This document shows, piece after piece, positions 6,583-60,679 of a stretch of 64,000 nucleotides of DNA. Positions within the stretch are counted from its first letter, which is position 1, and each line of letters opens with the position of its first letter. The notes below the pieces were generated by a model. It ran no database searches. It was not told where the DNA came from and was given only the letters and a program-made list of their open reading frames with translations. The stretch spans positions 1 to 64,000 of the IMG/VR virus record IMGVR_UViG_3300045973_000169; one strand, 5' to 3'. Both the position numbers and the translations under genes were made by a program.

Positions 6583-6593
6583 TTTAATTCTCC

Positions 6594-7412: not shown

Positions 7413-7423
7413 ATATCCTCCAA

Positions 7424-8137: not shown

Positions 8138-8140
8138 AGG

Positions 8141-9328: not shown

Positions 9329-9337
9329 TTAATGCTC

Positions 9338-10411: not shown

Positions 10412-10414
10412 AAT

Positions 10415-11529: not shown

Positions 11530-11538
11530 ATCACACCT

Positions 11539-11955: not shown

Positions 11956-11956
11956 A

Positions 11957-12724
11957 TTATTTTAAAAATAACCTCGTTTTTAATTCGTCTTTACATTCAA
12001 GTTGAGGATTCTGGTCAAATCCCATTTGGTCCATTCCAATATTAACTGCTAGTATAAGAGACTTAAGATCAATCTCAGAAGTCTGACTAGCAATATGTGT
12101 AAGCATATAACTTAAAGCACCTTGATATTCTTTATTAATATAAGCATCAGCACTAGTCTGATTAGACATACATCCACTAATAAGGATAATATCACCCATC
12201 TCAGTATTAGCATTAATCTCTTTAACTGAATCAGATATAGGATAAATATCTTTTCTTTCAGTTTCTTCTATTACCATAAATCTATTCTGTTTCTCTAAAC
12301 TAAAATCTCTAACTCCATCACCTGAATGACAACAGTCAAAGATAACATACATTAAAACACCTTTAGGCAATTGAGATAGAATAGAATAAATGTCATCATC
12401 TCTAATAACACCGAAAATATTATAATCATAAGGAACAATAGCTTCATCTAAATAATCAGCCTCTCCACCATTTATAGCAGCAACTTGACATCCATGTCCT
12501 GAATAATGCCATATAAGTATATCTCCACTAACAGAATCTTTAATTAGTTTCCTAAGTTCAGTTGTAATATTCTTCTGTGTAGCATGATCATCTTTAAGAA
12601 ATGTAATATCAGTATACCCATAAGATCTAGCAAGATCAATCATATGATCAACATCATTTAAGCATCCTCTAAGAGAAGATCCATGATAAGCATTAATCCC
12701 AACAAACAATCCTTTGTTAGCCAT
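11957..12724 (-). CDS. Metacaspase / peptidase C14 family protein
   Basis: VGIN.Y...LRGCLNDV, catalytic His HYSGHG, catalytic Cys DCCHSG, SGC...QTSAD, QNPQL; start MANKGL after GGAGGA. Confidence 0.9.
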   Translation of the reverse strand: MANKGLFVGINAYHGSSLRGCLNDVDHMIDLARSYGYTDITFLKDDHATQKNITTELRKLIKDSVSGDILIWHYSGHGCQVAAINGGEADYLDEAIVPYDYNIFGVIRDDDIYSILSQLPKGVLMYVIFDCCHSGDGVRDFSLEKQNRFMVIEETERKDIYPISDSVKEINANTEMGDIILISGCMSNQTSADAYINKEYQGALSYMLTHIASQTSEIDLKSLILAVNIGMDQMGFDQNPQLECKDELKTRLFLK

Positions 12725-12866
12725 TGTTATCCTCCAAAGCTTTCTTAATAATATCAATTAAACTAGGGCCAAACTTATATAGTTTATGTTTAGCTCCATA
12801 TGCCATGACCAAGTGATATAGCTCATCAGGGAAATCAATGGTCCTCTTAGTTAGTTTGTCTTTCAT
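12717..12866 (-). CDS. Ribbon-helix-helix-like DNA-binding protein
   Basis: KRTIDFPDELY...LIDIIKKAL pattern; first gene of the minus-strand operon; AGGAG SD. Confidence 0.55.
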   Translation of the reverse strand: MKDKLTKRTIDFPDELYHLVMAYGAKHKLYKFGPSLIDIIKKALEDNNG

Positions 12867-13181
12867 TAGGTCTCCTTTTAAACCGTTTGACTCGGCTCTC
12901 TTGATGTTAATAACGGTTTTCTTCTCGTACCTCACTTTAGTAATATTATAATATTTCTCTTATTAGGTTTAGAAATAATTTTATATAGGATTTGGTTTGG
13001 TATTTTATAGATTTTCAGTTTTAGTTATGTGGGATTTGGAAAAGTTATTTTTTACATATGGGTAGTTTGGAATGGGATTTAACATCCTAGTAGACTATAG
13101 GTGAGTTGGGGTATGGGACCCTAATTCATAAACCGGAACCCCGGTAGGGTAAGTGTTGTCTACTATGAAAGGAGATTCAAA

Positions 13182-13712
13182 ATGAAAGTACAATCAAAGG
13201 TAGTGTTCAATGATTCAGCAGCCGTTGTTGAGGTAACAGATGCGTTGTTAGTTAGATTAATCACTCTTGACATGCACTATGGGGCATACAAGCTTGTTAA
13301 TGGGGATTGGTCGGTACTGATATACAAGTCTCTTATGGACAGTGACCCAGTGGACACATACACATGTAATGGGGATCTATTTGATATGGAAGCATGTAGC
13401 AGTGCATGCCATGCATGTAAGCATAGTATACCGAATGCTGTGTATACAATGGACAATAGAGTAGCAGGACTACTAGCTGATGCTATGGGTGATATGAGTA
13501 AGACCACATCACGTAAGGATAGATACGATGTATTCTATACATACACTAAAGAACTTAACACTATGGACGAAGAGATAAATGTGCAGGTAGACAAGCAGTA
13601 TCATACCAGTAGTGCATGGGCTGCATGGCATGAGTATCACTGTGCTATACATCAAGTATGGACACTGCTATGGGATATGTATAGGGGTGTAGTACAGCAT
13701 AATAGAGCATAG
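13182..13712 (+). CDS. Hypothetical early protein
   Basis: AAGGAGA SD; first gene after the strand switch. Confidence 0.65.
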   Translation: MKVQSKVVFNDSAAVVEVTDALLVRLITLDMHYGAYKLVNGDWSVLIYKSLMDSDPVDTYTCNGDLFDMEACSSACHACKHSIPNAVYTMDNRVAGLLADAMGDMSKTTSRKDRYDVFYTYTKELNTMDEEINVQVDKQYHTSSAWAAWHEYHCAIHQVWTLLWDMYRGVVQHNRA

Positions 13713-14053
13713 GCAGGGTACCCTTAAGCCCTGTGCGTACATGTACTGCTAGTATAGGGTACATGTGGTGGGTATATAGGACAGTTGAGTCATCCATAAA
13801 GGACTCTTATCCTACAGTCAGGGAGGTGATATCATGACTCTCATGGATGTACTTGGCAATGATGCAGAGGACGTACTATGGGCGATAGGTAAGGCCCATG
13901 GGATGAACCCTATGGACAAGGTACAGCCACAAAAGAAAGAGAGTAGCATTACTGCTGAGTATCATAGGCAGTGCATGCACCCTGCTATAGATGAGGCTAT
14001 GGCAAGGGAAATGGGAATTGTGTAACATAACCAGAAACAAGGAGGATATAACA

Positions 14054-14359
14054 ATGAGTGACTTGATCATGGTAGTACTGGTAGAGTGGATCATGGTAGT
14101 GGGTGGGTACTGGTCAGTGGTACAGGGACAGGGGTACAGTGCATCGTGGTGTATACTGTTCGCTGTAGTAGCAGGTGTTGCTGCTGTATGCGTAGGTGTA
14201 TCAGAGAGGGCCAATGCGAGGTATTCTAAAGAGTTGATAGCTCGTATAGAGGAGAAACTCAAGGAAGAACACTACAATGTAACATCACTGTATAAAGGGG
14301 GGATGGACATAGCGTTTATGGAGCAGGAAGACATTAACAAGAAAGGGGAAAAATCATGA
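14054..14359 (+). CDS. Hypothetical membrane protein
   Basis: GGAGGA SD before ATG 14054; two hydrophobic segments. Confidence 0.55.
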   Translation: MSDLIMVVLVEWIMVVGGYWSVVQGQGYSASWCILFAVVAGVAAVCVGVSERANARYSKELIARIEEKLKEEHYNVTSLYKGGMDIAFMEQEDINKKGEKS

Positions 14360-14526
14360 GTATGTTCCTTATCAACAACGACAAAGTGAAGTACACGATG
14401 GATCAGGCCCTGGAGTTTGGGGAGATGTTGAAAGAGATGAATGGTGGCGGGCTTATCACTATTCGTCCATTGGCCTGTGGCGCTGGTTACGAAGTAAGTG
14501 TAGCATAACTAGAAAGGAGAAACAAA

Positions 14527-14838
14527 ATGAAAAAGAATAATCGCGGCTGGATCAGGGTATTCATTATGAGCATCGTCCTCTTGGCGATAGTACTCTGGCT
14601 TATCACCAGAGCTTTCCAGAAAGGCCACGTGTATTTCGATATGCGTGTTGACCCTTCGTTCGCGCAGACATCGTATCTTGGTGATACTCGGTTAGAATGC
14701 GAATGGACTGAAGGTGAGTCCTTCGCTAGATGCTACGATTCTATGACTGATCGAGGGAAACACAATCCAATACTGATAACCTTGACACCGGCGAAGCTCG
14801 AATGGTGCAGGAATGAGTTAATGAAAGGGAGGATGTAA
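14527..14838 (+). CDS. Hypothetical membrane-anchored protein
   Basis: AAGGAGA SD; N-terminal TM segment. Confidence 0.6.
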   Translation: MKKNNRGWIRVFIMSIVLLAIVLWLITRAFQKGHVYFDMRVDPSFAQTSYLGDTRLECEWTEGESFARCYDSMTDRGKHNPILITLTPAKLEWCRNELMKGRM

Positions 14839-14841
14839 ACT

Positions 14842-15447
14842 ATGAGAACTCTTATCTTTATCATACTGGGAGTACTGTTCGCTGATGTATTGGTTGGTTG
14901 TGGAGATAATGCAACTATCACTCAGCCTGAGCCTAAGCATACTGAGACCTATTCTATTACTACCATCAACACATCTCTCTCATCTGGGACTATTGTAGTT
15001 GAGGGCGGAAATAAAGAAATACATTGGGGTGAATCAAGAACTATCATTATCACTCCTAAACAGGGGATGAAGATCAACTCTGTTAGGTTAGATAATAAAG
15101 AGATATTACTACCAGGATCAGAGTTTGGGTTCTGTACAACGCTCACAGATATCAAAGAAGATTACATTATAACTGTCAGGTACTCATTTGATATCAAGTA
15201 CTATGACATAACAACAAGCTGCGGCCCTGGAGGAATCGTAGAGGTAAGGGGTGGACTAAGTACTCATATCGCTATGGGTAGCAACAGAGCAGTAGCTATT
15301 ATACCCTTTGCAGGGTATCGAATTAAGGTAATAAGAAAGGATGGTGAAGTAATAATCCCAGAAGATCCAAACACAGGCTATATGATTGTATTCACAGTCA
15401 TATCAACTTCACACAACATCAATGCAGAGTTCGAGGAGGTTAACTAA
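14842..15447 (+). CDS. Lipoprotein with two tandem InlB-B-repeat-like ('bacterial repeat') beta domains
   Basis: Lipobox LVGC; repeat Y.ITT....G.[IV].V.GG...I..G..R...I.P..G..I..[VI]R.D...I. Confidence 0.65.
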   Translation: MRTLIFIILGVLFADVLVGCGDNATITQPEPKHTETYSITTINTSLSSGTIVVEGGNKEIHWGESRTIIITPKQGMKINSVRLDNKEILLPGSEFGFCTTLTDIKEDYIITVRYSFDIKYYDITTSCGPGGIVEVRGGLSTHIAMGSNRAVAIIPFAGYRIKVIRKDGEVIIPEDPNTGYMIVFTVISTSHNINAEFEEVN

Positions 15448-15779
15448 TGGAAAAGCTTATTGGGTGGTTGATTGTGGCAGCAGGAGTGGAGTTTCGTGAG
15501 CTGGGGCAGTCTGCACAGCGTTGGACTGACATGGTGGCGATAGGTGGACGTTATCCTCTTGTTGCCTCACTGAATAAGGGCTTTGTTGTAGCTCGTATTC
15601 CCTGTATCATCAAGCAACAGGTGTCTGATGATATCATCATGGGTCAATTGGTCCCTCATACTGAACGCGATGAGGCGGCTAAAGGTGAAGAAACTTACTA
15701 TTACTATGAGATCCGTGATTACAATGTTAAGGATTTCAAGTACAACGATGCTGGTGATATCAGCATTGAACTCATCTAA
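15447..15779 (+). CDS. Hypothetical protein
   Basis: Coupled ORF. Confidence 0.55.
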   Translation: MEKLIGWLIVAAGVEFRELGQSAQRWTDMVAIGGRYPLVASLNKGFVVARIPCIIKQQVSDDIIMGQLVPHTERDEAAKGEETYYYYEIRDYNVKDFKYNDAGDISIELI

Positions 15780-15850
15780 CTGTAGTATCCGGCCAGATGG
15801 ACTCTACATCCATCTAAACTATCACTCTAACCAAACAAAGGAGAAACAAA

Positions 15851-16837
15851 ATGAAAACTATTATTATCATGCTTGCAGCAATTGAGTACGCAATTAACAT
15901 TGAAGATGGCGTTGCTATTACCGTGGAGAAGATCATGGATGCCCTCAGCAATAGGTTGGCTATTATCGATGGTATCCATAGCATCAATCCTAAAGGTAGC
16001 TGGATGCTCCCTGACCTCACGAGCCCTTACCCAAAGGAAAAGGGGGGAAGGACTTGGATGCGATTCACTGGGCTTAAGATCAAGAAGGAGAATGTCATCA
16101 CGCTTACTCCTAATGAGCAGAAATTATGGGAAGTTCGTGTCCAAAGCTGGTTAGACATAGCTAATGGGGTAACTACTAAGTTAGATCTTAGTTATGTTGT
16201 TACCCCTCCTGTTGTCCCCGAAGCTGATCGCCAGGATATCTTTACTGATAAGGATGGAACACAGTATCCTATTATATGGCATGCAAGCGCAAGAGGGCTT
16301 AATGCAAGGGTTGCATGGGAAGTAGAGTGCAGCAAGTGTACCACTAAGATTAAAGGCTATCGGCGTATTGCATCTAAGAATGGAGTGATCCCTGCTATTA
16401 CTGAACTTCAACCTTTCATGTGTGATGATGATGGTTGTGGTAATTCTGGCCGCAATTGGCTGTGCAAGGTACATATGCCATCGTTGGTTACTACAAACCA
16501 GTTGATCGAGGAAGCTCAGAAGCCTACATACATTGGGCAGATGAGTGTTAAACTCTTGAAGGAGCATTGCAAGGGTTTGGAAACACAGGTCCAGTTGGTC
16601 AAACAGCATGAAGAGCAGTACATCCAGGTTATTGACGAACTCGAGAAATCGGTTAAGCGTCTCGAGAAAGAGGTCCTGTCAATAGTCACCGCCAAGCAGA
16701 TGGTTGATGAGTTGGAGTCTTACTGTCAGACTCTGATTGTCAATCCTAACAAAGATGATGCTTCTGACCAGAAGATTGGGATCCTTGTCCGCTTGATTCA
16801 CCACTCAAGGGCTTGGATGTTGAAGGTGACGAAATAA
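15851..16837 (+). CDS. Hypothetical protein with CxxC motifs and a C-terminal coiled coil
   Basis: AAGGAGA SD; CSKC and CDDDGC motifs; heptad-rich tail. Confidence 0.65.
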   Translation: MKTIIIMLAAIEYAINIEDGVAITVEKIMDALSNRLAIIDGIHSINPKGSWMLPDLTSPYPKEKGGRTWMRFTGLKIKKENVITLTPNEQKLWEVRVQSWLDIANGVTTKLDLSYVVTPPVVPEADRQDIFTDKDGTQYPIIWHASARGLNARVAWEVECSKCTTKIKGYRRIASKNGVIPAITELQPFMCDDDGCGNSGRNWLCKVHMPSLVTTNQLIEEAQKPTYIGQMSVKLLKEHCKGLETQVQLVKQHEEQYIQVIDELEKSVKRLEKEVLSIVTAKQMVDELESYCQTLIVNPNKDDASDQKIGILVRLIHHSRAWMLKVTK

Positions 16838-17154
16838 TGGAAGAGACAGATCCTTGTACCCATTGTACACGCCCGTTCTGCTATGGGTGTGAATACCAAC
16901 TTAAAGGAGGTGATTAAAATGCCGTGGAGCTTGACCTACTTCTTCTTGTGTAGGCATTGTCACTATATGGATGAGATTCCTGCTCATTCATTGCCTGTAC
17001 ATGATGGTTGTCCCAAGTGTGGGGCAATCGGCTTCAGGAGACAGGTGCTTGAGGATGATCAGTTGGTTGATTTCAATCCTAAGAAGCATGTGAAGTAAAC
17101 AAACGTTCTGAGCAGGACGTTAAAAGGCTCATACTTAAATAGAGGAGATATATC

Positions 17155-20100
17155 ATGAGTAAGATCAATCGGAACCAATTGGTAACATTGGCCCAGCAGT
17201 TTGGTTTGTCATGGACTAAAAGCAAAACAATGTCATGCGATGATGTGTTGGCATTCATCGTTAAGGCTGGTGGTACTGTTGAAGAGGAACTTGACCGGTG
17301 CCATGAGCATGAAGCATTCGCAAAAGATGGCAAACTCTGCTCCTTGCTGCTCAAAGCAAAGGCAGAGAAAACAAAGGGCAAAGGCCCTAAAAAGGAGGCT
17401 CCTATGACCAAGGAGCATTACGACCCGATGGTGGAAATGAAGCGCCTTCTCGCTGAACAGGAGAAAGGTACGATTGTGACAACTGAGGAGCTGTTGACCT
17501 CTACGTCACCTACTGAGGTGAAAGATGTCAGGACAGGTAAACGCTTCACTCTGATCACTGGAGAGGAAGTCAATGCCTCTGAACAGGTAATGATGCCCGG
17601 TATCCTCGTTAAGCTGTACAAACAGGGTGAGGGTTTCATCATCCGTTTCGAGGATGGTGAGGTACCTATCGGTATCCATGCCATAAACAGGTATGGGGCT
17701 GCAACGATGAAGAATGAAGATGGGACTAATGTCTTCAAACTCATCCGCATTCAGCTCATTGACCCTCAGCTCAGGATCGAGGCTACCAAACAGTGCATCA
17801 GCAAGTTGCACGACCATGGGATGGAGAAGTATGGCCGTCCTCTGTACCCTATCTTCTGGCATTCCGATACCAAAGATATGAAGGGTCTCGTTGGCTTCAA
17901 AGAGGATTTCGATAAGCTGTTGGGTGTCGATATCTTTGCTGGCAAGGATCCGGTCAAGCTCATTGGCTATGATACTCCTACACGTATCATGGTGGCAAAC
18001 TGCACTAAGAACAGTCTCAGGTTCTTGGTTGTTAATCCTGTTGGCCCCAACGGTGAGGCTTACTGCGATGGGCAGGCATACATGAACTTCGAGTTCAAGT
18101 ACATCAAGTGGCTGTCCACAAAGGAAAAGGAAGCTGGGAAAGAGGCTCAGTGGAAGAAAGAGGATACCATGCAGTTCAGGTGCTTCTCTCCTCTGTTCAT
18201 GAAGGGTCAGCAGCTCCTTGGTTGGCAGTATGTCCACGATATCTGCCATTCGTACAACATCGAGAACTGGCAGGACTACGATGGTGTGGTCAACCTCGAT
18301 GTCATGAAGACTAACCCTAATGGCCTGAAACATGGGGATAGCTTCGAAGTCAATCCGATGGATATCAGTATCGTTAACATGATCACTGAGAATCCTTCAT
18401 CCTCTGCTGGTGTGCAGTTGGTCACTCACAAGCCAAGTGTTGTTTGTGCTTTGGCTGATGAGATGGGTGTTGCCGAGAACGGTAAGACCTTCCGTGGTAT
18501 TCTGGATGGCAATCTCGATGACGTCTATAAGATGCTCATGTCCTCCAAGGTTAAGTCCATGGAAGACTCTGACATCGCTCCTGCTATGTTCTTGGGTATG
18601 AGTGTACCCAATGGCAAGGGTAGCTGGCGTCCTCTCGCTATCAAGAGCATCAGGGATCGTGAAGCTGCTCGTATCACGAAGTTCTACCAGACTGATGTGC
18701 TCAAGATGCAGACGTCCGAGTTGGCTCTGTACTCCTGCGCTACACCGGTTATCATCAAGGATGCTAAAGGTAATCTCCGTGATTGCCTGTCAGTATTCGA
18801 GCGCTACACTCTGGAGAATGATGGGAATGCAGTTAACTATGTTATTCTCCCCGATGATATCGCTTTCATCCGCAAGTGGGTAGCCAAGAAGTGCAGGAAC
18901 TCGATGCGCCATCCGGTGGTTGGTATTGGTTCTATTCAGGAGGATACTAATCTCCCTAAGTATTTCGTCGATGAACTCATTCAGATGGGTTTCAAGTCCA
19001 TCTATACGATCAATGTGGATGGTGTCGATTATGCTGTCCATCCTGCTAAACACGGGATTCTTATCTCCTATGATCGGGCAATCGCTCAGAATGGGGACTT
19101 TGATGGTGATATGCAGTATTTCATCATCAGTGACACTGCCAAGTTCGGTGTTGCAAAGATGCCCGAGATCACCATCGACATGGAAGACACTGGCAAAGAG
19201 ATCGATGCCTACAACCACAACGTGTACCACAAGTTCCTGTTGTACAAGTATGTGCAGGTTATCAACTCTCAGCCTCTCATTGGCTTGGTTGACCTCTTGG
19301 TACGTCGTATCATCGAAGAGAATAGGCTCAACAACAAGGGTCTGTCCGTTGCTCAGTACATGAAGTTGGCTCTCATCAGGGAGTCCATGATTCAGGGCAG
19401 GAAGCATCTCACCGATGATATGGACTTGGATAACCCTCCATCCGTGGATGAGGTCTACAAGAACATCAGTGAGCGTTTGATTCGCACGTATCACTGGGCT
19501 GGGAAGATGAATCCCAAGGGTGCTGCTGCTCCTGCTACGCACAAGCTGAAAGTGTTTGGTGCATCTGGTACTGGCATCAGGGCAACTTCAAGCTTCCAGG
19601 CTGTTCAGAACATTGTTGAATTGGTTCCTACAGCCAAGCGCCAGCCTAATTACTCCTTGGACCCTTACTCCAAGGGCTGGGATGAACTGATTGGTGCTCA
19701 GTACATGTACCACAATGAGGATGCTGTTTACTGGATGACCAAGTTCGATACCCTTTGGACTGCTCTTCAGAAGGGCAATAGCACCATCCTCGGTGTTGAA
19801 GTATCTGCCAAGCGTATCATCAGTGTAGTTTCGTTCTGCCACTACTTGGTGTACGGTAACTCTGGCAAGACCTGGTTGGGTTACACTGCAAGTGCACGTG
19901 ACCTGCTCTCTATCAGGGATGAGAATGTTCAGCGTCAGGCATTCTTTGACCTCAACAAACAGATCGATGCTCTCGTTGCTGGATTCGTTGAGGAGCAGTG
20001 TGGTCTGGACCCTCACCGTCAGGATCTGCTCAAGAAGATGTTGACCATTTACTTGGGTAAGATTGGCTTCGGTGGTCGCTTGGGCAAGGGCATTTACACT

Positions 20101-20247
20101 CTGCCTGATAATGGTGGTATCATTGGTCATTCTGGTGGTTGCTTCTGGCGTATGAAAGCCAAGTACATCATCTGGGTTGCCAAACTCATCCATCCCAATA
20201 ACCCGATGCTGGACCGTCTCATCGACGATTACAACATCAAGATGTAG
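17155..20247 (+). CDS. Single-subunit double-psi-beta-barrel RNA polymerase (YonO / eukaryotic RdRP-like)
   Basis: Catalytic NGDFDGDMQY preceded by MRHP; upstream CDGQAY and QFR...MKG motifs in the same order as DG / QxR..KG / RxP / DxDGD in QDE-1-type polymerases; GAGGAG SD. Confidence 0.85.
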   Translation: MSKINRNQLVTLAQQFGLSWTKSKTMSCDDVLAFIVKAGGTVEEELDRCHEHEAFAKDGKLCSLLLKAKAEKTKGKGPKKEAPMTKEHYDPMVEMKRLLAEQEKGTIVTTEELLTSTSPTEVKDVRTGKRFTLITGEEVNASEQVMMPGILVKLYKQGEGFIIRFEDGEVPIGIHAINRYGAATMKNEDGTNVFKLIRIQLIDPQLRIEATKQCISKLHDHGMEKYGRPLYPIFWHSDTKDMKGLVGFKEDFDKLLGVDIFAGKDPVKLIGYDTPTRIMVANCTKNSLRFLVVNPVGPNGEAYCDGQAYMNFEFKYIKWLSTKEKEAGKEAQWKKEDTMQFRCFSPLFMKGQQLLGWQYVHDICHSYNIENWQDYDGVVNLDVMKTNPNGLKHGDSFEVNPMDISIVNMITENPSSSAGVQLVTHKPSVVCALADEMGVAENGKTFRGILDGNLDDVYKMLMSSKVKSMEDSDIAPAMFLGMSVPNGKGSWRPLAIKSIRDREAARITKFYQTDVLKMQTSELALYSCATPVIIKDAKGNLRDCLSVFERYTLENDGNAVNYVILPDDIAFIRKWVAKKCRNSMRHPVVGIGSIQEDTNLPKYFVDELIQMGFKSIYTINVDGVDYAVHPAKHGILISYDRAIAQNGDFDGDMQYFIISDTAKFGVAKMPEITIDMEDTGKEIDAYNHNVYHKFLLYKYVQVINSQPLIGLVDLLVRRIIEENRLNNKGLSVAQYMKLALIRESMIQGRKHLTDDMDLDNPPSVDEVYKNISERLIRTYHWAGKMNPKGAAAPATHKLKVFGASGTGIRATSSFQAVQNIVELVPTAKRQPNYSLDPYSKGWDELIGAQYMYHNEDAVYWMTKFDTLWTALQKGNSTILGVEVSAKRIISVVSFCHYLVYGNSGKTWLGYTASARDLLSIRDENVQRQAFFDLNKQIDALVAGFVEEQCGLDPHRQDLLKKMLTIYLGKIGFGGRLGKGIYTLPDNGGIIGHSGGCFWRMKAKYIIWVAKLIHPNNPMLDRLIDDYNIKM

Positions 20248-20769
20248 TATTGTCTCGTAGTATAATGGTTTGGTAGTAATATCCTTAAAACTACCAATAT
20301 ATTAGGAGGTAAGTATGTCAGACAGAATGTTTAAGCACGATATTTGTTTGCCAATAGGTGATTGCGATGATGATATAGGTGATTTCTTTAGTACTCTTGG
20401 CTGGGTTATTTATTTATCTATCCCAGCATTTGAAGGGATGGTTATCCAATTTGAGAATGGTGAACACTTAATGTTCTATGTTAAAGACATCATATACTCT
20501 TACTGGAAAAATACAGCTGTAATAACGCTAGTTAAATACAGAGGGAGTTGCTCCCCATACAAGAAAGGAGTATGATATGTCAAATAACTTACGTGAACGT
20601 TTTATTGAAACATATACGACATTATCTCTTTTAGTTAGAGAGTTTTATGGTGGTCGGCGTGTATCTAATAAAAGGAGGAAATCATGATTGAAGTTCACTT
20701 ATCGTTAATGGGGTGGTATTACGTTGTGATACCTATTTGTGCTAAAGTATCTGTTTATCTGATCTATTA

Positions 20770-21207
20770 ATGGAGGGTGATATGAGAAGGGGATATAAAC
20801 AACCTAAACTTGTTGATAAAGTTAAATCTCTTATTGAAGCAGATGCTATCTCATTAGATAGAGTTAGATGCTATGATAACTCTTTGGAGAGTATCCCAGC
20901 TAAAACAGGCAGGACATCCAGAACTCATGGGTTCGAACGTGTCATAATAGAGAGGAATCAGAAGCATCGTGTAAGGTTGAAGAAAGAAAAGAGAATGAAA
21001 GAGATATTTAAAAGGGGCAAGGAAGTCCTAGCAAAGCAAGGAAGTGATCACAACTGTATTAGGAGAGGTAAACGAACTTATAGTAAAGAAGAAGCTGATG
21101 TATATATTAAAGGTTACAAGCAAAAGAAACTTGGGAAATACTATTGTAAGAAGTGTAGAGGTTGGCATCTAACTTCTAAGCTGGAGGTGAGTAATGGTGA
21201 TACTTAG
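20770..21207 (+). CDS. Basic hypothetical protein with C-terminal YxCxxCxGWHLTS zinc motif
   Basis: The YYCKKCRGWHLTS motif is common in small phage proteins. Confidence 0.55.
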   Translation: MEGDMRRGYKQPKLVDKVKSLIEADAISLDRVRCYDNSLESIPAKTGRTSRTHGFERVIIERNQKHRVRLKKEKRMKEIFKRGKEVLAKQGSDHNCIRRGKRTYSKEEADVYIKGYKQKKLGKYYCKKCRGWHLTSKLEVSNGDT

Positions 21208-21714
21208 ATTCATATGGTTATCATTAATGGACCTATTCTTTCTATTCACTCAATTTAAATTAATAGGACTAATAGTATTCTTCCTATTGTTCTGTATTAT
21301 GTTCTACTTGAAGCGTAAATAGAATTTCATGGATTCTTCTGGAGTCATTCGAGAGAGTGGCTCCTAGAGAGTGCGCGAGCATTCTAACTGCAGTACACGT
21401 TACACCTGTTATACCTGTAGTTTACAAGTTACACCTGTTGTACCATAGTACCGTTTAACCGTTACACATTAGTAAATATACCGCTGCTCCAGTCCCCCTA
21501 AAGTCAAGGGCGTGGTGCTATTTGTTGTGTTGAGTTATTAAGTGAGTGATTGTGTTAGTTGTAGCATTGTAGACGTAAGTGTAGCATTTGTCCGAAGATG
21601 TCTTATCGTTGGTTAGTGTTCGTTCGTGGAGTCGTGTTAGTGTATGAAATTTTGAAATGGTGTTAGTGTTTGGCACCATTCAATAAAAAAAAACGTGTTA
21701 GGAAGGAGATTGTC

Positions 21715-22200
21715 ATGATTAAAAAGCGTTCCATGGTAGCAACTGTTGAGAGTCTCAAGACCGATTTCGTGAAGTTTGGTAGCAATGCTGCCATCCGCCA
21801 GATCGATATCAATCTTGGTGACCAGACCCGCATCCGCTGTAATGAAGGCGATGCACTGTTCGACTCTGTTGTAAAGTCCGTTCGCGGTGGCTGTACTCTG
21901 TCGTTCGACTATGCCGACATCCGTGAGGACAAGAAGACCGAGGCTTTGATTTCGGGCGGTACTGGTTCTGTTGGTTCCGGTTGGTTCACCGTGCATGGCG
22001 TCGAGATTACCGATGCGAAACCCGGCGAGATCAGCAAGTTGCTGGAAGAGCGTTTGGAAGCTGCTGCTGTTCCGCTGTCCTTCCCCGAGGCTCCGCGTGA
22101 AATCGTTACCGGTAAGACAAAGGGTGACATTGTTCCCGAGTACAAAGCTGGGGCACATGCTGAAGCCTCTGCTACTGGTGACACGGTTGAGAAGTTCTAG
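21715..22200 (+). CDS. Hypothetical protein, strongly codon-biased (likely highly expressed)
   Basis: AAGGAGA SD before ATG ~21715; GC-rich third codon positions. Confidence 0.65.
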   Translation: MIKKRSMVATVESLKTDFVKFGSNAAIRQIDINLGDQTRIRCNEGDALFDSVVKSVRGGCTLSFDYADIREDKKTEALISGGTGSVGSGWFTVHGVEITDAKPGEISKLLEERLEAAAVPLSFPEAPREIVTGKTKGDIVPEYKAGAHAEASATGDTVEKF

Positions 22201-23719
22201 CCTTTTGTGCTAGTGTACGATTTTGGTAGGGGTACCGAATCCCTGCAGAGGGATAGGATTGAGTTGCTAATCCCTATCAAACGGTAGAGGGGCCTCCATT
22301 GTTATGCATACAGTGGAGCCGAAAAGCCCCTCACCGTATTATTCTGTATCGAAGGAAGGAGAACTTAAACCAATGGTTATCGAAATTAAGAGTGACACCG
22401 TAGTCAGCTCAAATCGACCATGCCATGGATGTCGAAACTTCCAGTTTAGGAGAGTAACAACGGAAGAGACCGATCCTGAAGCTAGGATTGAGGCGCAACA
22501 ACTTACAAAAGAAACCTGTTTAACTTGTGGTATCACTCGACCACGAACTTCTTTAAAGATTTATAGAGTGAAAAGTCCACCTGAACGTCGAAAACAAGAA
22601 AGGGGATGATATTTTGAAAAACTTCTTTAAAAAAGTATTCAAGTATGGGTCCCTCTTTATTATGGGATATGCATTACACATACTTGTAGAGGCATTTGTT
22701 GTAACGAATATACTTGCTATGTTCGGGATGCATATTCCCGTTCTAGTATAAGGGGGTGAACTTATGATCCATCCCATACTTCTGGCTTTCATTTCTATGA
22801 TTGTTGGGAGTGTTGCACTCGTTATTACATTCGCTACAGGTCGTTGGTTCTTTAGGAACTTTATTGATCCACCCAACATGGAACTTGTTCGTGAGTTTAA
22901 CTCTTGTGTTGAAACTATAACTCGAGAACATCAACGTGGGAAACAACTCTATCGTAAATTCGGTACTGCTGAAATGAGAATCGCACAAAAGAATTGGGGT
23001 GCTGAAACACTTAGCACTTTCAAGTGAGGTGGTATATCATGCTCATGGTATTCTATGTTGGATTCGGAACTGGCATATTGTTTTATATCATTAAACTTGT
23101 CATGTTCTTTATTAGTACCCGTGGTTGGTTAAACTGGCTATGGAGATTAGCTCATCGTAATGGATTAGCTTTATTCATATTCGACTTTATATTCGGATTG
23201 ATAATCTCTAGTGCCATACACACTGCTGGAGCCGAAGGGTTAACTACCCTATTTGTATTTATCGGCTTCACTGTAAGCTCATGTTTTTACGTTATCACAC
23301 ACCTTAGTTGTCGAAAGGGAAAGGAGTTAGCATGCGCATTTGGCCGTTCGTATTAATGATGACAATGTGCATACTCTTCTTTGGTGTAATGTTCTTTGCA
23401 TTCTATAAGTTTATCATCCTCTTAATCGGGGCTGCTTGCTTTGCATGTGCAATGTTCGTAACACTTAAGGTCTGTATCCCATTTGTCAATTGGTGCTATG
23501 GTTTGAAACACAGAATTAAAGATTGTACTGGTAGATAGCGTTCGCGGACTGCCATCCTGAGAGATAGAGACTCTAAGTGCCAACTCAAAAAGGCATGTAC
23601 AGTTTCTTTGGCTGATATACGTGAACATACGCTAAATGATCCTATATTACGACTCTTGCCTGACTGGTCATCGGGTAAAAGCATATTTAGAGGATTAGTT
23701 CTACCAGTGCATTAAATAA

Positions 23720-23806
23720 GCCTCTATGGTGGAATTGGTAGACACAAGGGACTTAAAATCCCTCGACAGTAATGTCGTCCCAGTTCGACTCTGGGTAGGG
23801 GCACCA
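23720..23806 (+). tRNA. tRNA-Leu(TAA)
   Basis: GCCTCTA/TAGGGGC acceptor stem, D-loop GG, anticodon loop CTTAAAA, long variable arm, GTTCGAC T-loop, CCA end. Confidence 0.93.
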
Positions 23807-23828
23807 CTCTTACACGAAAGGAGATACA

Positions 23829-24032
23829 ATGAAACTGCCTAACATGACTAAGTTAAAAGACATCAAAGGGGAACCTATGTATGTTAATGCTGACAGGGTT
23901 ACTTCAGTTACTCTTGATGCAACGGGTACGAACACTGTCATCTGTCTTGATGGCAATGTCCAAGGCTTTTATGTCAAGGGTACGCCCGACGAAGTTGTTG
24001 CACTCATCGACGCTGCACATATCATCTCGTAG
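23829..24032 (+). CDS. Hypothetical small protein (FlbD-like pattern: KL...G.P.YVN.D.V...TVI)
   Basis: AAGGAGA SD; motif resemblance only. Confidence 0.5.
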   Translation: MKLPNMTKLKDIKGEPMYVNADRVTSVTLDATGTNTVICLDGNVQGFYVKGTPDEVVALIDAAHIIS

Positions 24033-24060
24033 TATAAACTCGCTTGAAAGGAGAATTACC

Positions 24061-24435
24061 ATGAACAAGAAAGAACAGGATGCATTCCTCCTTGCCTACA
24101 ATGGCAGGACATTCGAACAACTGACTGAAGCAAAGAAATCCGATTTCAGCGGAAAAGAAGACATCTACTTCGATATCATGAAAGCTAAGGGAGCTGATAA
24201 ACCTGCTGGTGCATCTACACTTATCGTCATGGGCCTGAAAAAGAAAGTCATCGACGGTGTTGTCGAATCCATCACCGGTCTCAAAGCAACTGGCGCTCAG
24301 GCTATCATCGAGTCTGATGCCGAGAAAGAAAAGAACGCCCTGCTGGAAGGTATCGCTGAAGCAACCAAAGACATGCCGCAACCTGCTGTAGCTGCCATGC
24401 TCAAAGCTTTGAACGATGCCAAACAGCACCCGTAA
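24061..24435 (+). CDS. Hypothetical protein
   Basis: AAGGAGA SD before ATG 24061; codon-biased. Confidence 0.6.
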   Translation: MNKKEQDAFLLAYNGRTFEQLTEAKKSDFSGKEDIYFDIMKAKGADKPAGASTLIVMGLKKKVIDGVVESITGLKATGAQAIIESDAEKEKNALLEGIAEATKDMPQPAVAAMLKALNDAKQHP

Positions 24436-25902
24436 CAATCCGCAAACCATGGAGGTTAGGTGTTAGTTTTGAATCTAACCTTCATGGTTGTAGTACACTT
24501 GAGGAACATATATTCTTCAGTGCATATTATATTACGAAAAGGAGCTTCAAATGTTTACCACAAAAACTTATTCCCGTCAAAAGCTTAAACAGTGTCGTAC
24601 TAAGATAGTATTACTCCTCGCAAGAAATCCTCGAACGTATAGTTCTGGAAGTGTCTCATCGTGATGTACATTCCTTGTATGTTTACTATTACTAAATTTT
24701 TTAGTTAAATTGTTAGATCCGACTCTTGTAAAAAGTTAGCCTTTTAATTTTGACATTTTTTGGAAACTTAATCAAATCAATAGCTTGTGTTAATTACGCA
24801 GAGATAGTATATTTAGTATCACTAAAAACTTCTATATGCGTATAACATGAGTATGATTGTATTTCTAATAGAAACTTATACCGTAACTTATTGATATTGT
24901 TAAATAAAGGGGGAATATGCATAAATTGTACAGTCACTGTTCTATTAATGTCTATTTCAAGTTGTCTCTATTTAGACTATAAACTTATTCCCAACTTATC
25001 CAAACTTATACTCATCTCACTCCACTATAATCACTTCTCTACAGAAACTTATTCCTTTCCTCGTCCTTACCCATCTAACTTAGTGTTATTGTTCGGAGTT
25101 ATCTTCCCACTGTATATAGGTGTTATTGTTTGGTGTTTAATCTATTATTTAAAAGGTGGTATTGTATGAAAAAGGTTATATTTGAAGAAGAAGTTAGTGA
25201 TACTGTTAAGTTTAATGATTGTAATATTCGTTCTCGGCCTATTGGAGTCCAAGTAGGTAATAAGAAATATTTTACTACTGATGCTGATATGAAAGATTCT
25301 GCTTATCAGTTAGTTGATCTTGATGAGAATTTTAAATTCGTCCTTGGTTCTTGTGTTAGAGGTCAGGATACTCAAAGCTTCCTTAAGGATATTAAGATTA
25401 AGTTTCCTCTTTGTCTTATTTATGAGTTTAATTCTTCTCGTGAATTGCTTGTTTGGTTACTTAAATAAAAGGGGTGTTATATGTTCTGGTTATTAGTTTG
25501 GTTTACTCTTGGTGTTATACCTTGGTTCTATGATATTAAGAAACATAAGGTTCTTGTTATAGGGGATATATTGTCTTTTATAATATGTGCGGCTTTCGGT
25601 CTCTTTGGTTTTATTTGGTTTGTTGTTCTCCTTAGTCGTGATGATAAGGTTTGTCTTGACAATCCATTTTATAAAAGGTGACCTATGTTCCCTATTCTTA
25701 TGAGCCTTGTTCTCTGGTATATTATAGGAGTTGTATTATCCTTGTATACATTCTCAATCAATGATTGTTCTGATAAGTATATTGACCCTGTTGTTTTTAT
25801 ACTTGCTTTACTTGGACCTTTTGTTATTGGGATGGTGTTCTTTGCTTTACTTGAACGTTATTTAAATCGTGTTAAAATTAAGAATCCATTTTGTAAAAGG
25901 AG

Positions 25903-31253: not shown

Positions 31254-31322
31254 ATATGTCTCCTTATTTGTTAATAACTAGATTAGAATTAAAGTGTCTA
31301 TCCAGTCAGGCGCACCAAATTT

Positions 31323-33885: not shown

Positions 33886-33944
33886 AATTTTAAGATAGCT
33901 TAAACGGTAGAGTATTACAGTTATTAACATGTAAGATACAATAC

Positions 33945-51070: not shown

Positions 51071-51429
51071 AATGAAAGTTGAAATTATTCACGAAGAAGT
51101 AAAGCCAGTTATCCCGCCAGTTAAAGAAGTAGTTATTACTCTTACAGCGAAAGAAGCTTTAATCCTTAAGGTTTTAATGGGACATATAGCTGGAGTTAGT
51201 GGTGGACATGAGCTGAGTATTTTTAGAGATAAAATCTGGGAATCTTTAAGTAAAGATTTACCTGGGATTTATTCTGATAAATTTAAAGCAGTTGAAAATG
51301 AATGTAAAAATGTTAAATTAGCATTTTAGTATAAGGAGTAAATATGTATCAAGCTGTAAGCATATAAATGCAAATGTAGCTATCTGCATTAATGTGTTAT
51401 TAACATCTATCAAAACTAAGGAGTCTCAA

Positions 51430-59924: not shown

Positions 59925-60679
59925 AGGAGTAGTTAATGTTACATCTTCACTTAGATAGACAGAAAGTAGTATTAGAGAGCTTGATATATTCTTGTTCTAA
60001 TAAGTCATGTGCTTTCTACAGTCCATTTGCTGTTATTGAATGTGCTGAATGTTATACAAAGAGGAATAAGTCTAATGATGATAATAGAATTGGCACCTGT
60101 TGAGTGTTCTATATGTGGCAATAAGAACTTCTCTTTGTTTAGAACACATCAAGAGTTAATTGATTTTAGATGTATGGAATGTAGAAGTTCTCTTATGGAT
60201 ATTGAGAACCATGCTATATTTGAAAATAATATAGAATTAATAAAGAGAGAAATGATATGAATAATATACCAGAATTGCAAAACTTATCAGATAGATGTTC
60301 TGAAACTTATACTGTTGATTATGTAAAAATATGACATTCGAAGAGATAGTAAAAGAAGAACTTGCAATACAAAGACAAATGATTGAATTACTTCTTGAAG
60401 AGAATGTTGCTTTAAATGCTAAAGTGGCAGCTCTAGAAGAAGCTTTAATTGTACATGAAGTCCTTGATAAATCTGAACTTGAGACACTAGAGCAAGCTTG
60501 GTATCAAGATGTTGCCTTAGAAAGAATGGCAATTCAGTAGAGAGTTATTAACAAGGACATACAGAGTAGTTCCCTACCCATCACCGCAATAGGAAAGGTT
60601 TACTTAGCTTAAATACCGAGTCAGAAGAGGGACTGATAATAAGCGAAGTAAGTGGTACTATTACAGGAGGCGTTCGTGA

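What the first reader, a model, noticed from the sequence alone, without database searches (positions are those of the whole stretch)
17155..20247. Divergent YonO/QDE-1-type single-subunit RNA polymerase in the early block
Seen: CDG, QFR..KG, RHP and NGDFDGD motifs on one 1030-aa chain, with markedly more GC-rich codon usage than the rest of the window. Known: SPbeta YonO and eukaryotic RNAi RdRPs share this two-barrel architecture. Inference: an early-expressed phage RNAP that transcribes middle or late genes, possibly marking an uncharacterised phage lineage.
Basis: partly seen in the sequence, partly recalled or inferred. Interest (0 to 1): 0.7.

Follow-up and report, generated by a model that had tools for sequence, protein, structure and literature searches.

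The report
New phage single-chain two-barrel RNA polymerase
A 207-kb pond phage encodes, in an unusually GC-rich early gene block, a 1030-residue enzyme whose predicted fold and invariant residues match single-chain "two-barrel" RNA polymerases (YonO, QDE-1, P23-45 gp64); it is too divergent for sequence searches to recognise and probably drives the phage's later genes from its own short promoter.

Summary
ORF 17155-20247 (+) encodes 1030 aa carrying CDG(304), QFR(340), KG(350), RHP(585) and NGDFDGD(646). Its GC3 is 0.59, against about 0.2 for the rest of the genome.

Sequence searches do not place it: no Pfam hit, no tblastn match in deposited phages, no PDB sequence hit, and hhalign against YonO gives E 0.068. 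The family is rare, with 30 representative clusters among 1.84 billion proteins.

An AlphaFold model built on 32 homologues (pLDDT 87, pTM 0.80) matches QDE-1 (Foldseek E 4e-11, Z 15.9), plant RDR2, Thermus-phage gp62/gp64 RNAPs (Z 13.5), crAss gp66 and YonO (E 7e-9). Both double-psi barrels and a bridge helix are present.

Context:
- The gene lies 4 kb inside an 11.7-kb GC-rich block of small orphan ORFs next to a divergence point. This layout recurs in three relatives.
- A compact motif, GTTA(T/A)TAACA, occurs 29 times (2.3 expected), co-oriented with genes. It is absent from the early block and conserved at the syntenic site in three relatives.
- No sigma factor and no other recognisable RNAP was found. 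A 1659-aa structural-module protein carries a conserved RxP…NADxDGD and is a candidate virion RNAP.

Verdict: this is a new divergent family of a known kind. Its role as the middle/late transcriptase is inferred, not shown.

The parts
17155..20247 (+). Gene for the 1030-aa single-chain two-barrel RNA polymerase (P0001)
   Evidence: ORF; translation; model with pLDDT 87; fold matches to QDE-1, RDR2, gp62/gp64, gp66 and YonO
17155..17289 (+). N-terminal helical hairpin (aa 1-45), SAP/Rho_N-like; followed by a disordered Lys/Glu-rich linker (aa 50-128)
   Evidence: Helices 6-15, 20-25 and 28-37 at pLDDT about 80, then a stretch below 50. Pfam Rho_N hits 5 of 26 family members (best E 8e-9) but not P0001 itself
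17983..18381 (+). DPBB-B (beta-like barrel, aa 277-409) carrying invariant D305-G306, Q340-x-R342, K350 and K385
   Evidence: Invariant columns; beta-strands in the model; DPBB-type folds and PolD DP2 align to 274-409 and 277-669; KG aligns to YonO's KG in hhalign
18706..19158 (+). DPBB-A (beta'-like barrel, aa 518-668) with R585-H-P587 and the metal-binding D648-F-D650-G-D652 (nt 19096-19110)
   Evidence: DPBB domains and RNAP largest subunits align to 517-668. RxP and DxDGD are in register with YonO and with the PhiKZ gp55 beta'-like subunit. P587, D648, D650, G651 and D652 are invariant
19216..19407 (+). Bridge-helix-like 38-residue helix (aa 688-725, invariant G710) and the I-Q-G-R-K-H loop (aa 746-751; I746 invariant, K750 conserved in at least 90%)
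   Evidence: Helix 688-725 in the model; invariant and nearly invariant columns; RNAP largest-subunit alignments extend to about 845. Reading the loop as trigger-loop-like is inference
12936..24900 (+). GC-rich block of rightward small orphan ORFs (putative pre-early/early region) containing the polymerase gene
   Evidence: GC 0.42-0.49 against 0.30-0.35; GC3 0.31-0.59 against about 0.2; no PHROG or Pfam assignments; the same layout and GC rise in L011 and L015; no GTTAWTAACA inside it
12905..12914 (-). Candidate phage promoter GTTATTAACA at the head of the leftward gene block
   Evidence: Conserved at the syntenic place in L013 (exact), L011 (GTTAATAACA) and L015 (one mismatch)
31269..31278 (-). 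Candidate promoter GTTATTAACA, 25 nt upstream of the start of the leftward gene 30912-31253
33920..33929 (+). Candidate promoter GTTATTAACA, the first rightward copy after the early region
51396..51405 (+). Candidate promoter GTTATTAACA, 34 nt upstream of an SD plus ATG
60544..60553 (+). Candidate promoter GTTATTAACA (intergenic)
21670..22200 (+). 176-aa early-block protein that co-occurs with the polymerase in relatives; acidic C-terminal tail ending in F
   Evidence: BLASTP hits to L011 and L015; alignment; no Pfam or PHROG hit
22614..22751 (+). 45-aa hydrophobic protein conserved downstream of the polymerase gene in the three relatives whose contigs reach it (L011, L013, L015)
23024..23356 (+). 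110-aa hydrophobic protein conserved in L011 and L013
12717..12935 (-). First leftward gene, ribbon-helix-helix-like, conserved in L011 and L013; the true start is probably the internal SD plus ATG, giving 49 aa
   Evidence: The fold assignment is by eye only

Best explanation
The gene encodes a non-virion, single-chain RNA polymerase of the two-barrel (double-psi beta-barrel) superfamily, in the phage/plasmid/RdRP clade that holds YonO, QDE-1, P23-45 gp64 and crAss gp66.

Shown:
- The fold.
- Two barrels on one chain.
- A beta'-type barrel (aa 518-668) carrying the invariant RxP and DxDGD Mg-binding triad.
- A beta-type barrel (aa 277-409) carrying an invariant DG, QxR and two Lys.
- A bridge-helix-like helix (aa 688-725).
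- No large insert in the beta-type barrel.

Inferred:
- The 11.7-kb GC-rich block beside the divergence point is expressed first. Either host RNAP or an injected enzyme does this. The candidate injected enzyme is the 1659-aa structural-module protein with a conserved RxP…NADxDGD.
- The 1030-aa enzyme made from this block then initiates, without a sigma factor, at the compact promoter GTTA(T/A)TAACA. That motif lies 20-52 nt upstream of start codons, heads the leftward block, and recurs through the replication/tRNA arm and the structural arm.
- In this way the enzyme transcribes middle and late genes independently of host RNAP, as in the P23-45 vRNAP to nvRNAP cascade.
- The N-terminal SAP/Rho_N-like hairpin on a flexible linker probably adds nucleic-acid binding.
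For: Fold:
- Model pLDDT 87, pTM 0.80.
- Foldseek PDB: QDE-1 E 3.7e-11, gp66 3e-7, RDR2 4e-7, P32 gp64 5e-7.
- VIA-align: QDE-1 Z 15.9 over 669 residues, ZmRDR2 13.8, P74 gp62 13.5, multisubunit largest subunits about 8, DPBB domains on 521-668.
- YonO E 6.7e-9.
- ESM Atlas TM 0.55-0.61 over about 718 residues to a phage cluster in which 51% of members carry PF05183.

Active-site residues:
- They are invariant across a family with about 18% mean column identity.
- They are in register with YonO and with the PhiKZ beta'-like subunit.

Context:
- The layout of divergence point, then small orphan ORFs, then the polymerase 3-5 kb in, is the same in the window, L011, L013 and L015.
- The GC-rich island recurs in L011 and L015.

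Promoter motif:
- 29 matches against 2.33 expected, with a maximum of 7 in 100 simulations.
- 6 matches in the window against 0.66 expected.
- Orientation always follows the local gene direction, and 21 of 29 are followed by an SD plus start codon.
- None lies in 12.9-31.2 kb.
- It is conserved at the syntenic site in three relatives whose polymerases are 25-52% identical to P0001.

Other enzymes:
- No Sigma70_r2 and no Rpb1_2 match in a genome that CheckV rates 100% complete. T7-type RNAP and PF05183 gave no match either, but their control genomes did not ring.

Precedent: P23-45 gp96 to gp64 (PMC10770324), and YonO transcribing SPbeta late genes (PMC5467207).
Against: - There are no expression data. 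No RNA run was listed, and the phage is known from a single pond metagenome.
- The enzyme is not linked to the motif by any direct evidence. The motif could instead serve the putative virion enzyme, host RNAP with an unrecognised factor, or a repressor.
- Template preference (DNA or RNA) cannot be read from the fold, and the best structural match, QDE-1, uses both.
- 'Early' rests on position and gene content only.
- Sigma-70-type consensus sites are depleted in the block (16 against 33 expected). This neither proves nor excludes host transcription, because the host is unknown.
- Global TM-scores against solved structures are only 0.39-0.46.
- The second relative contig has too few motif copies to judge conservation genome-wide.
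Confidence: 0.6

Rival explanations
1. It is a genuine two-barrel RNAP, but GTTAWTAACA is not its promoter. The enzyme would transcribe only a subset of genes, for example the AT-rich early ORFs at 24.9-31 kb or its own block. The motif would be read by the putative virion enzyme, by host RNAP with an unrecognised phage factor, or bound by a regulator.
For: There is no direct link between the enzyme and the motif. In P23-45 the non-virion enzyme covers early and some middle genes only, and host RNAP transcribes the late genes. A second candidate polymerase exists. A conserved ribbon-helix-helix-like gene sits beside the motif at the divergence point.
Against: The motif heads operons in every module outside the early block, and always with the right polarity. 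It is a single compact element 20-52 nt from start codons, unlike -35/-10 promoters. No sigma factor was found. A virion enzyme would be expected to act on the first-expressed block, and that is exactly where the motif is absent.
Confidence: 0.2
2. It works mainly as an RNA-templated polymerase, like the QDE-1/RDR enzymes. It might make antisense or double-stranded RNA or amplify a phage RNA, and would not be the phage's transcriptase.
For: The best structural matches are QDE-1 and plant RDRs. The language-model neighbours are eukaryotic RdRP clusters.
Against: Every characterised phage member of this clade is DNA-dependent: YonO, gp64, gp96 and gp66. The genome shows no other recognisable way to transcribe about 190 kb of genes headed by non-sigma-type motifs. 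The Z-scores to phage gp62 (13.5) and to QDE-1 (15.9) are similar once the length difference is allowed for.
Confidence: 0.07
3. The GC-rich block is a foreign island, either a recent horizontal acquisition or a parasitic element, and the polymerase serves that element and not the phage programme.
For: The block is sharply bounded and differs strongly in GC3. It contains a tRNA gene at its distal end. All its genes are orphans.
Against: The same block, in the same place beside the same leftward genes (RHH-like gene, metallophosphoesterase), is found in relatives whose polymerases have diverged to 25-52% identity. Two of them, L011 and L015, also show the GC rise. No integrase or flanking direct repeats turned up in the scans made here.
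Confidence: 0.07
4. It is a catalytically dead or re-purposed two-barrel protein, for example a DNA-binding or structural factor or a PolD-like DNA polymerase.
For: No activity data exist. PolD DP2 shares the two barrels (Z 5.9).
Against: The full Asp triad, RxP, and the Lys/Arg residues of the second barrel are invariant across the family. The RNAP and RdRP matches are far stronger than the PolD match.
Confidence: 0.03

Closest known systems
Thermus phage P23-45 gp64 / P74-26 gp62 non-virion RNAP (PDB 8f72, 8f5m), with its partner virion RNAP in gp96
   Same: Both are single-chain two-barrel phage RNAPs. VIA Z is 13.5 over 442 of 592 residues and Foldseek E is 5e-7. Both are encoded in the first-expressed block of small genes. 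P23-45 also has a second two-barrel enzyme embedded in a giant virion protein, and here a giant structural-module protein carries a conserved RxP…NADxDGD. Each enzyme has its own short promoter motif.
   Different: There is no detectable sequence similarity. P0001 is about 430 residues longer, with an N-terminal SAP/Rho_N-like hairpin, a linker and a large C-terminal helical domain. The host phage is an AT-rich 207-kb genome, not a GC-rich 84-kb siphovirus. The candidate virion enzyme is not shown to be a tape-measure fusion. In P23-45 host RNAP transcribes the late genes, whereas here the motif also heads structural operons.
YonO of Bacillus prophage SPbeta (UniProt O31945) and YonO-like enzymes of jumbo phages 0305phi8-36 and c-st
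   Same: The fold matches (AFDB Foldseek E 6.7e-9, residues 161-991 against 92-807). The motifs follow the same order, DG … xR…KG … RxP … DxDGD. There is no SBHM/flap insert. YonO is a phage-encoded transcriptase for late genes. YonO-like enzymes are known in some jumbo phages.
   Different: The sequence relationship is not significant (hhalign E 0.068, probability below 1%). There is no PF05183 hit. The YonO family is large, with more than 3500 proteins, whereas this family has 30 representative clusters. YonO has a C-terminal Cys-rich tail and P0001 does not. P0001 lies in an early-type block and is not adjacent to the late operon.
QDE-1 / cellular RNA-dependent RNA polymerases (PF05183; PDB 2j7n, 7y7p; RDR2 7rqs, 7w84)
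   Same: These are the best overall structural matches: Foldseek E 3.7e-11 with about 1000 columns, and VIA Z 15.9 over 669 residues spanning model 140-1025. They share two barrels, a bridge helix and a clamp-like C-terminal region.
   Different: These are eukaryotic RNAi enzymes with RNA-templated or dual activity. Identity is 10-12% and the Pfam model does not hit. Nothing in the phage context suggests an RNAi-like role.
crAss-like phage phi14:2 gp66 virion RNAP (PDB 6vr4)
   Same: It has the two-barrel single-chain core (Foldseek E 3e-7, VIA Z 8.3 over 627 residues). Like crAss-like phages, this genome has a run of three giant genes in the structural arm.
   Different: gp66 is a 2180-aa virion-packaged protein. 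P0001 is half that size and lies in the early block. The analogue of gp66 here would be the 1659-aa protein, not P0001.
PhiKZ/AR9-type multisubunit phage RNAPs
   Same: They use the same catalytic chemistry. The family's RxP…DxDGD aligns to the PhiKZ gp55 RNP…NADFDGD (E 0.47), and AR9 and PhiKZ beta' fragments match 517-668. These are jumbo phages that are independent of host RNAP.
   Different: Those enzymes are split into 4-5 subunits, are close to bacterial beta/beta' and are recognised by Pfam. No such genes occur here.

Membership tests
Two-barrel (DPBB) nucleotide polymerase superfamily | Two double-psi beta-barrel domains forming one active site | tested here: met
   A confident model. 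Full-length matches to QDE-1, RDR2, gp62, gp66 and YonO. DPBB domains align to 521-668, and DPBB-type barrels and PolD to 274-409 and 277-669.
Two-barrel (DPBB) nucleotide polymerase superfamily | DxDxD (DxDGD) metal-binding triad in the beta'-type barrel, preceded by RxP | tested here: met
   D648-F-D650-G-D652 and P587 are invariant in 26 sequences. R585 is in the family consensus but is not among the conserved columns listed. The motifs are in register with YonO and PhiKZ gp55.
Two-barrel (DPBB) nucleotide polymerase superfamily | Two basic residues supplied by the beta-type barrel | tested here: inconclusive
   R342, K350 and K385 are invariant and lie in the 277-409 barrel, and K350-G aligns to YonO's KG.
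Two-barrel (DPBB) nucleotide polymerase superfamily | Template-dependent NTP polymerisation | not testable with these tools
   Needs a biochemical assay.
YonO family (sequence family) | Significant sequence or profile similarity to YonO | tested here: not met
   hhalign of A2 against YonO gives E 0.21. A2 against the YonO family alignment A3 gives E 0.068, probability 0.8%. The exhaustive profile search returned only about 30 proteins, none from the large YonO family.
YonO family (sequence family) | Same fold, with no SBHM/flap insert in the beta-type barrel | tested here: met
   AFDB YonO E 6.7e-9. The barrel spans about 130 residues with only one short helix inserted.
Cellular RdRP / QDE-1 (Pfam PF05183) | Match to the PF05183 model above threshold | tested here: not met
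   No Pfam hit at E<=1 for P0001. None among the 26 members. No hit in the six-frame genome search, although its control genomes did not ring.
Cellular RdRP / QDE-1 (Pfam PF05183) | RNA-templated RNA synthesis | not testable with these tools
   Needs an assay.
P23-45-type two-polymerase cascade (virion RNAP to non-virion RNAP) | The non-virion two-barrel RNAP is encoded in the first-expressed block | tested here: inconclusive
   Position and gene content fit and are conserved, but there are no expression data.
P23-45-type two-polymerase cascade (virion RNAP to non-virion RNAP) | A second two-barrel RNAP carried in a giant virion protein | tested here: inconclusive
   The 1659-aa protein in the structural arm has RFP…NADNDGD, conserved in a homologue 28-29% identical. 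hhalign to the P0001 family gives E 0.052 with the motifs in register. Its nearest named language-model clusters are phage RdRP-like, score 0.77, which is a lead only.
Multisubunit phage RNAP (PhiKZ/AR9 type) | Separate beta- and beta'-like subunits recognisable by RNA_pol_Rpb1/Rpb2 models | tested here: not met
   No PF00623 match in the genome, with controls positive in 14 of 14 genomes. The enzyme is a single chain.
T7-like single-subunit RNAP (PF00940) | Right-hand Pol-A-type fold / PF00940 match | tested here: not met
   No Pfam hit. The fold is two-barrel, not right-hand. The genome search was negative but its control was uninformative.

The most novel reading that the evidence does not exclude
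This phage lineage runs a transcription programme fully independent of host RNAP, using two anciently related two-barrel enzymes: a giant virion-delivered one and the 1030-aa non-virion one. The conserved GC-rich island is then an adaptation that partitions the genome between them. Pre-early genes would be written in host-like, GC-rich codons readable before the phage's 19 A/U-decoding tRNAs appear, and would be free of the AT-rich nvRNAP promoter. The rest of the genome would be AT-rich and promoter-studded. That would be a new family of RNAPs with a defined 10-nt promoter, usable as an orthogonal expression system.
Probability: 0.3. Interest if true: 0.8.

Novelty: new variant of a known kind. 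Interest (0 to 1): 0.62.

Why it matters
Single-chain two-barrel RNAPs are the minimal relatives of cellular RNA polymerases, and only a few have been studied (YonO, QDE-1, crAss gp66, P23-45 gp64/gp96). This finding adds several things:
- A family that sequence methods cannot see (no Pfam or PHROG assignment), with only about 30 clusters among 1.84 billion proteins.
- A confident model of that family.
- A clear candidate promoter of 10 nt. The promoter YonO recognises had not been determined when YonO was characterised (PMC5467207).
- A probable partner virion enzyme.

If the link between enzyme and promoter is confirmed, it offers a compact sigma-independent transcription system. It would also be a second, independent example of the virion-to-non-virion two-barrel cascade, this time in a jumbo phage. 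The lineage-conserved GC-rich early island is an unusual compositional feature that could bear on how phages stage codon usage or template choice.

Tried and rejected
- Pfam and PHROGs on P0001: nothing useful. The only hit was phrog_24524, of unknown function, at E 0.009.
- tblastn and megablast against 50,697 deposited phages: no match for the protein or the flanks. The only hit was a tRNA-Leu match to an Aeromonas phage.
- PDB sequence searches with 4- and 32-sequence profiles: no significant hit.
- First AlphaFold run with 4 sequences: pLDDT 39.5, discarded.
- hhalign against YonO alone and against a YonO family profile: not significant, although collinear.
- Word-index search with the 26-sequence profile: no new members.
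- The search for related loci with the wide alignment failed for lack of a conserved stretch. With the narrow alignment it found only the known relative.
- A search for sigma-70-type promoters in the early block found them depleted. No convincing early-promoter motif came from k-mer enrichment; GTAAGTGT occurs three times in the block and is a weak lead.
- The motif in the relative's whole 83.5-kb fragment: only 2 copies, which is uninformative.
- RNA-seq evidence: no RNA run was listed, and the only DNA holder is kept as contigs, so neither transcript ends nor physical genome termini could be examined.
- The giant protein: no PHROG, Pfam, deposited-phage or IMG/VR match, and hhalign of the whole protein against the P0001 family found nothing.
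- Complex prediction was not used. No protein-protein binding claim is made, and the enzyme plus a partner exceeds the size limit without arbitrary trimming.
- The family's hallmark strings are not found in the held supplementary tables of PMC10770324. This is weak negative evidence only.


Full report
**1. The observation**

The window is the first 64 kb of a single 206,638-bp virus record. The record has 33.8% GC, a 20-nt terminal overlap consistent with circular assembly, and CheckV completeness of 100%. An ORF runs exactly from 17155 to 20247 on the + strand, 1030 aa, behind a strong Shine-Dalgarno.

All the reported motifs are present on this chain: CDG at 304, QFR at 340, KG at 350, RHP at 585, NGDFDGD at 646. 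The gene has GC 0.48 and GC3 0.59, while genes outside the block have GC3 of about 0.13-0.31. The anomaly belongs to a block from about 12.9 to 24.9 kb, the only extended GC-rich island in the genome.

**2. Sequence searches do not place it**

- Pfam gives nothing at E<=1.
- PHROGs gives only a marginal hit to an unknown family.
- tblastn finds nothing in 50,697 deposited phages.
- PDB sequence searches find nothing significant.
- The 5.8-billion-protein index holds three relatives at 44-53% identity.
- An exhaustive profile search of 1.84 billion representatives finds 30 proteins, most of them about 1000 aa.
- In a 26-member alignment with about 18% mean column identity, the invariant columns are D305, G306, Q340, R342, K350, K385, S416, G419, Q421, P587, D648, D650, G651, D652, G710, I746, D856 and N1016.

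I fetched YonO from the SPbeta record. It shows the same ordered set of motifs. Formal comparison is not significant: E 0.21 against the single sequence, and E 0.068 at under 1% probability against a YonO family profile. Even so, that 312-column alignment is collinear and puts KG, RxP and DxDGD in register.

A sub-threshold hit (E 0.47) aligns the family's RxP…DxDGD with the RNP…NADFDGD of the PhiKZ beta'-like subunit. A language-model search pointed to eukaryotic RdRP clusters at score 0.76, which is a lead only.

**3. The fold decides the question**

A 4-sequence model was useless, with pLDDT 39.5. With 32 homologues the model reached pLDDT 87 and pTM 0.80, with residues 130-1030 mostly above 90.

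| Library | Best matches |
|---|---|
| Foldseek, PDB | QDE-1 E 3.7e-11 (about 1000 columns); crAss phi14:2 gp66 3e-7; RDR2 4e-7; P32 gp64 5e-7; P74 gp62 2e-6 |
| VIA-align, independent of Foldseek | QDE-1 Z 15.9 (669 residues, model 140-1025); ZmRDR2 13.8; P74 gp62 13.5; P23-45 gp96 9.3; gp66 8.3; largest subunits of Pol I/II, archaeal, bacterial, vaccinia and ASFV RNAPs about 7-8 |
| AFDB Swiss-Prot | Plant and fission-yeast RDRs about 1e-9; YonO 6.7e-9 |
| AFDB clusters | Mostly proteins named RNA-dependent RNA polymerase, E 1e-11 to 1e-7 |
| ESM Atlas | TM 0.55/0.60 over 718 residues to a 1618-member cluster (53% viral; 51% of members carry PF05183) |
| BFVD | Unnamed uncultured-phage proteins, crAss-like proteins, P23-45 gp64 |

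In the VIA-align search, isolated DPBB domains align to 521-668, and DPBB-type barrels and PolD DP2 align to 274-409 and 277-669.

From the model I read the following layout:

| Residues | Element |
|---|---|
| 5-40 | SAP/Rho_N-like hairpin (Rho_N is detected by Pfam in 5 of 26 relatives) |
| 50-128 | Disordered linker |
| 130-275 | N-terminal beta domain |
| 277-409 | DPBB-B, with no room for an SBHM insert |
| 410-517 | Helical connector |
| 518-668 | DPBB-A |
| 688-725 | 38-residue bridge-like helix |
| 746-751 | I-Q-G-R-K-H loop (I746 invariant, K750 nearly so) |
| About 760-1030 | Helical C-terminal domain |

**4. Genomic context**

The rest of the genome is clearly a tailed phage. It encodes:
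- a large terminase, a metallophosphoesterase, an RtcB-like protein, NAMPT, an RNA ligase, a CCA-adding enzyme, a DNA polymerase and a primase-helicase;
- head-protein-like and tail fibre/spike genes on the minus-strand arm;
- 19 tRNAs.

Minus-strand genes end at 12.9 kb. Plus-strand small orphan ORFs begin at 13.2 kb, and the polymerase gene lies 4 kb in. None of ten neighbouring genes has a meaningful PHROG or Pfam assignment.

The same layout (leftward genes, divergence point, about ten small ORFs, then the polymerase 3-5 kb in) is found on the contigs of P0003, P0006 and P0013. The polymerases on those contigs are 52%, 28% and 25% identical to P0001. L011 and L015 also show a GC-elevated block bounded by AT-rich flanks; L013 does not clearly.

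So the island is a lineage feature and not a recent insertion. Three downstream genes co-occur with the polymerase: a 176-aa protein with an acidic tail ending in F, and two small hydrophobic proteins. The first leftward gene is also conserved.

**5. A candidate promoter**

K-mer counting in intergenic DNA singled out GTTATTAACA. The evidence for GTTAWTAACA is as follows:
- It occurs 29 times genome-wide against 2.33 expected, with a maximum of 7 in 100 first-order Markov simulations.
- It occurs 6 times in the window against 0.66 expected.
- Every copy points the way the local genes run: + between 33.9 and 111 kb; - at 12.9 and 31.3 kb and from 127 to 205 kb. The one exception is the palindromic shadow of a + site.
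- 21 of the 29 are followed at 20-52 nt by an SD and a start codon.
- No copy lies between 12.9 and 31.2 kb.
- The element is conserved on the minus strand at the head of the leftward block in L013 (exact), L011 (GTTAATAACA) and L015 (one mismatch).

By my own rough estimate, a match with one mismatch or fewer in a roughly 300-bp region on a given strand has a chance of a few per cent per locus.

The whole genome has no Sigma70_r2 and no Rpb1_2 match. PF00940 and PF05183 also gave no match, but their control genomes did not ring. Sigma-70 consensus sites are depleted in the early block, 16 against 33 ± 4.6.

**6. A possible second polymerase**

A scan of all ORFs for [DN]xDGD found NADNDGD in a 1659-aa protein (genome 166921-171900, minus strand). 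This gene is the middle one of three giant genes in the structural arm, and an RFP motif lies 42 residues upstream of the triad.

- The relative that carries P0003 encodes a 1746-aa homologue, 29% identical over the matched C-terminal part and 28% over the aligned core. In it, R(F/Y)PNIY…GH…LMNADxDGD is conserved.
- hhalign of this core against the P0001 family gives E 0.052 with RxP and DxDGD in register.
- The nearest named language-model clusters for residues 800-1500 are phage RdRP-like proteins, at score 0.77.

Each of these is only a lead.

**7. Mechanism**

The closest functional precedent is P23-45. There a virion RNAP inside a giant virion protein transcribes a roughly 9-kb pre-early block that includes the gene for a non-virion two-barrel RNAP. 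That second enzyme then transcribes early and some middle genes from its own motif (PMC10770324). YonO transcribes the SPbeta late operon (PMC5467207).

I propose the same logic here. The GC-rich block is expressed first, by the candidate virion enzyme or by host RNAP. It yields the 1030-aa polymerase, which initiates at GTTAWTAACA and transcribes the remaining modules.

What is shown: the fold, the catalytic residues, the synteny, and the motif's statistics and conservation. What is inferred: the timing, DNA dependence, the pairing of enzyme with promoter, and the identity of the first polymerase.

**8. Novelty**

YonO-like single-chain enzymes are already known in a few jumbo phages (PMC7824862), so the kind is known. 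New here are:
- a family invisible to sequence methods and very rare;
- its N-terminal hairpin;
- a defined candidate promoter conserved with it;
- the conserved GC-rich early island;
- a possible giant partner enzyme.

The family's hallmark strings are absent from the held supplementary tables of the 23-family survey, which is weak evidence that it has not been catalogued.

Noticed in passing
L006:2921-7900 (genome 166921-171900, - strand; outside the window): A 1659-aa protein, the middle one of three giant genes (1948, 1659 and 2533 aa) in the structural arm, carries RFP…(42 aa)…NADNDGD. The motif is conserved in a 1746-aa homologue on the relative's contig. hhalign to the P0001 family is in register at E 0.052, and the language-model neighbours are phage RdRP-like. 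It is a candidate virion-packaged two-barrel RNAP. It also has a C-terminal hydrophobic segment.
   Followed up: partly
window 12936-24900; L011 ~5000-15000; L015 ~1000-11000: The GC-rich island (GC3 up to 0.59 against about 0.2) around the polymerase gene recurs in two related phages, so it is conserved and not recently acquired. The cause is unknown. Ideas: codon usage suited to host tRNAs before the phage tRNAs appear, avoidance of the AT-rich promoter, or evasion of AT-targeting silencers.
   Followed up: partly
L002 (genome 86236-91311) and window 23720-23806, 31323-31397: The genome has 19 tRNA genes, 17 of them in one cluster at 86-91 kb interspersed with GTTATTAACA sites. Most have U at the wobble position and so decode A-ending codons. 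One tRNA-Leu(taa) lies at the distal end of the GC-rich block.
   Followed up: no
window 17506-18333, 18790-19542, 19588-20193 (- strand): Long antisense ORFs (201-275 aa) lie inside the polymerase gene and are 'conserved' in L011. They are most likely a by-product of GC3-rich codon usage, which removes stop codons on the opposite strand, and not genes.
   Followed up: partly
window 13149, 14494, 21575 (+): GTAAGTGT(A/T)G occurs three times in the early block against four in the other 195 kb. Two copies lie exactly 33 nt upstream of start codons, within a 39-nt repeat. This is a weak candidate for an early-class promoter or operator.
   Followed up: partly
window 21394-21444 (+); L011 ~4488-4505: A tandem pair of 22-nt repeats contains CACCTGTT(A/G)TAC. 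A similar CCTGTTGTACAGGTG palindrome abuts the promoter-like motif in the divergent region of L011. It could be an operator for a conserved regulator.
   Followed up: no
window 12936-13181: The 246-nt AT-rich divergent region contains three GGGATTT(GG)-type repeats. It sits at the minimum of cumulative GC skew, which is the point where gene orientation switches.
   Followed up: no
L002:7571-7789 (genome 91571-91789, +): A 72-aa ORF contains GDFDGDE, the same core as the polymerase motif. It is probably a coincidence.
   Followed up: no
window 35601-36977, 42612-44261, 51995-53470, 55949-57169: An RNA-repair and NAD-salvage set: an RtcB-like protein (phrog_850), nicotinamide phosphoribosyltransferase, an RNA ligase and a CCA-adding enzyme. 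This is typical counter-defence against tRNA-cleaving or NAD-depleting host systems.
   Followed up: no
L011:6725-7651 and L011:1-419; L014:4692-5474; alignment A2: The relatives' early blocks carry anti-defence-type genes: Gad2 in L011, ART-PolyVal nearby, and NADAR/YAcAr next to the polymerase in L014. Two polymerase family members are fused to a cpYpsA (SLOG) domain, and five carry a detectable Rho_N domain.
   Followed up: no
genome ends (window 1-20 and genome 206619-206638): The first and last 20 nt are identical, which indicates a circularly closed assembly, although the virus catalogue labels the record 'linear'.
   Followed up: partly
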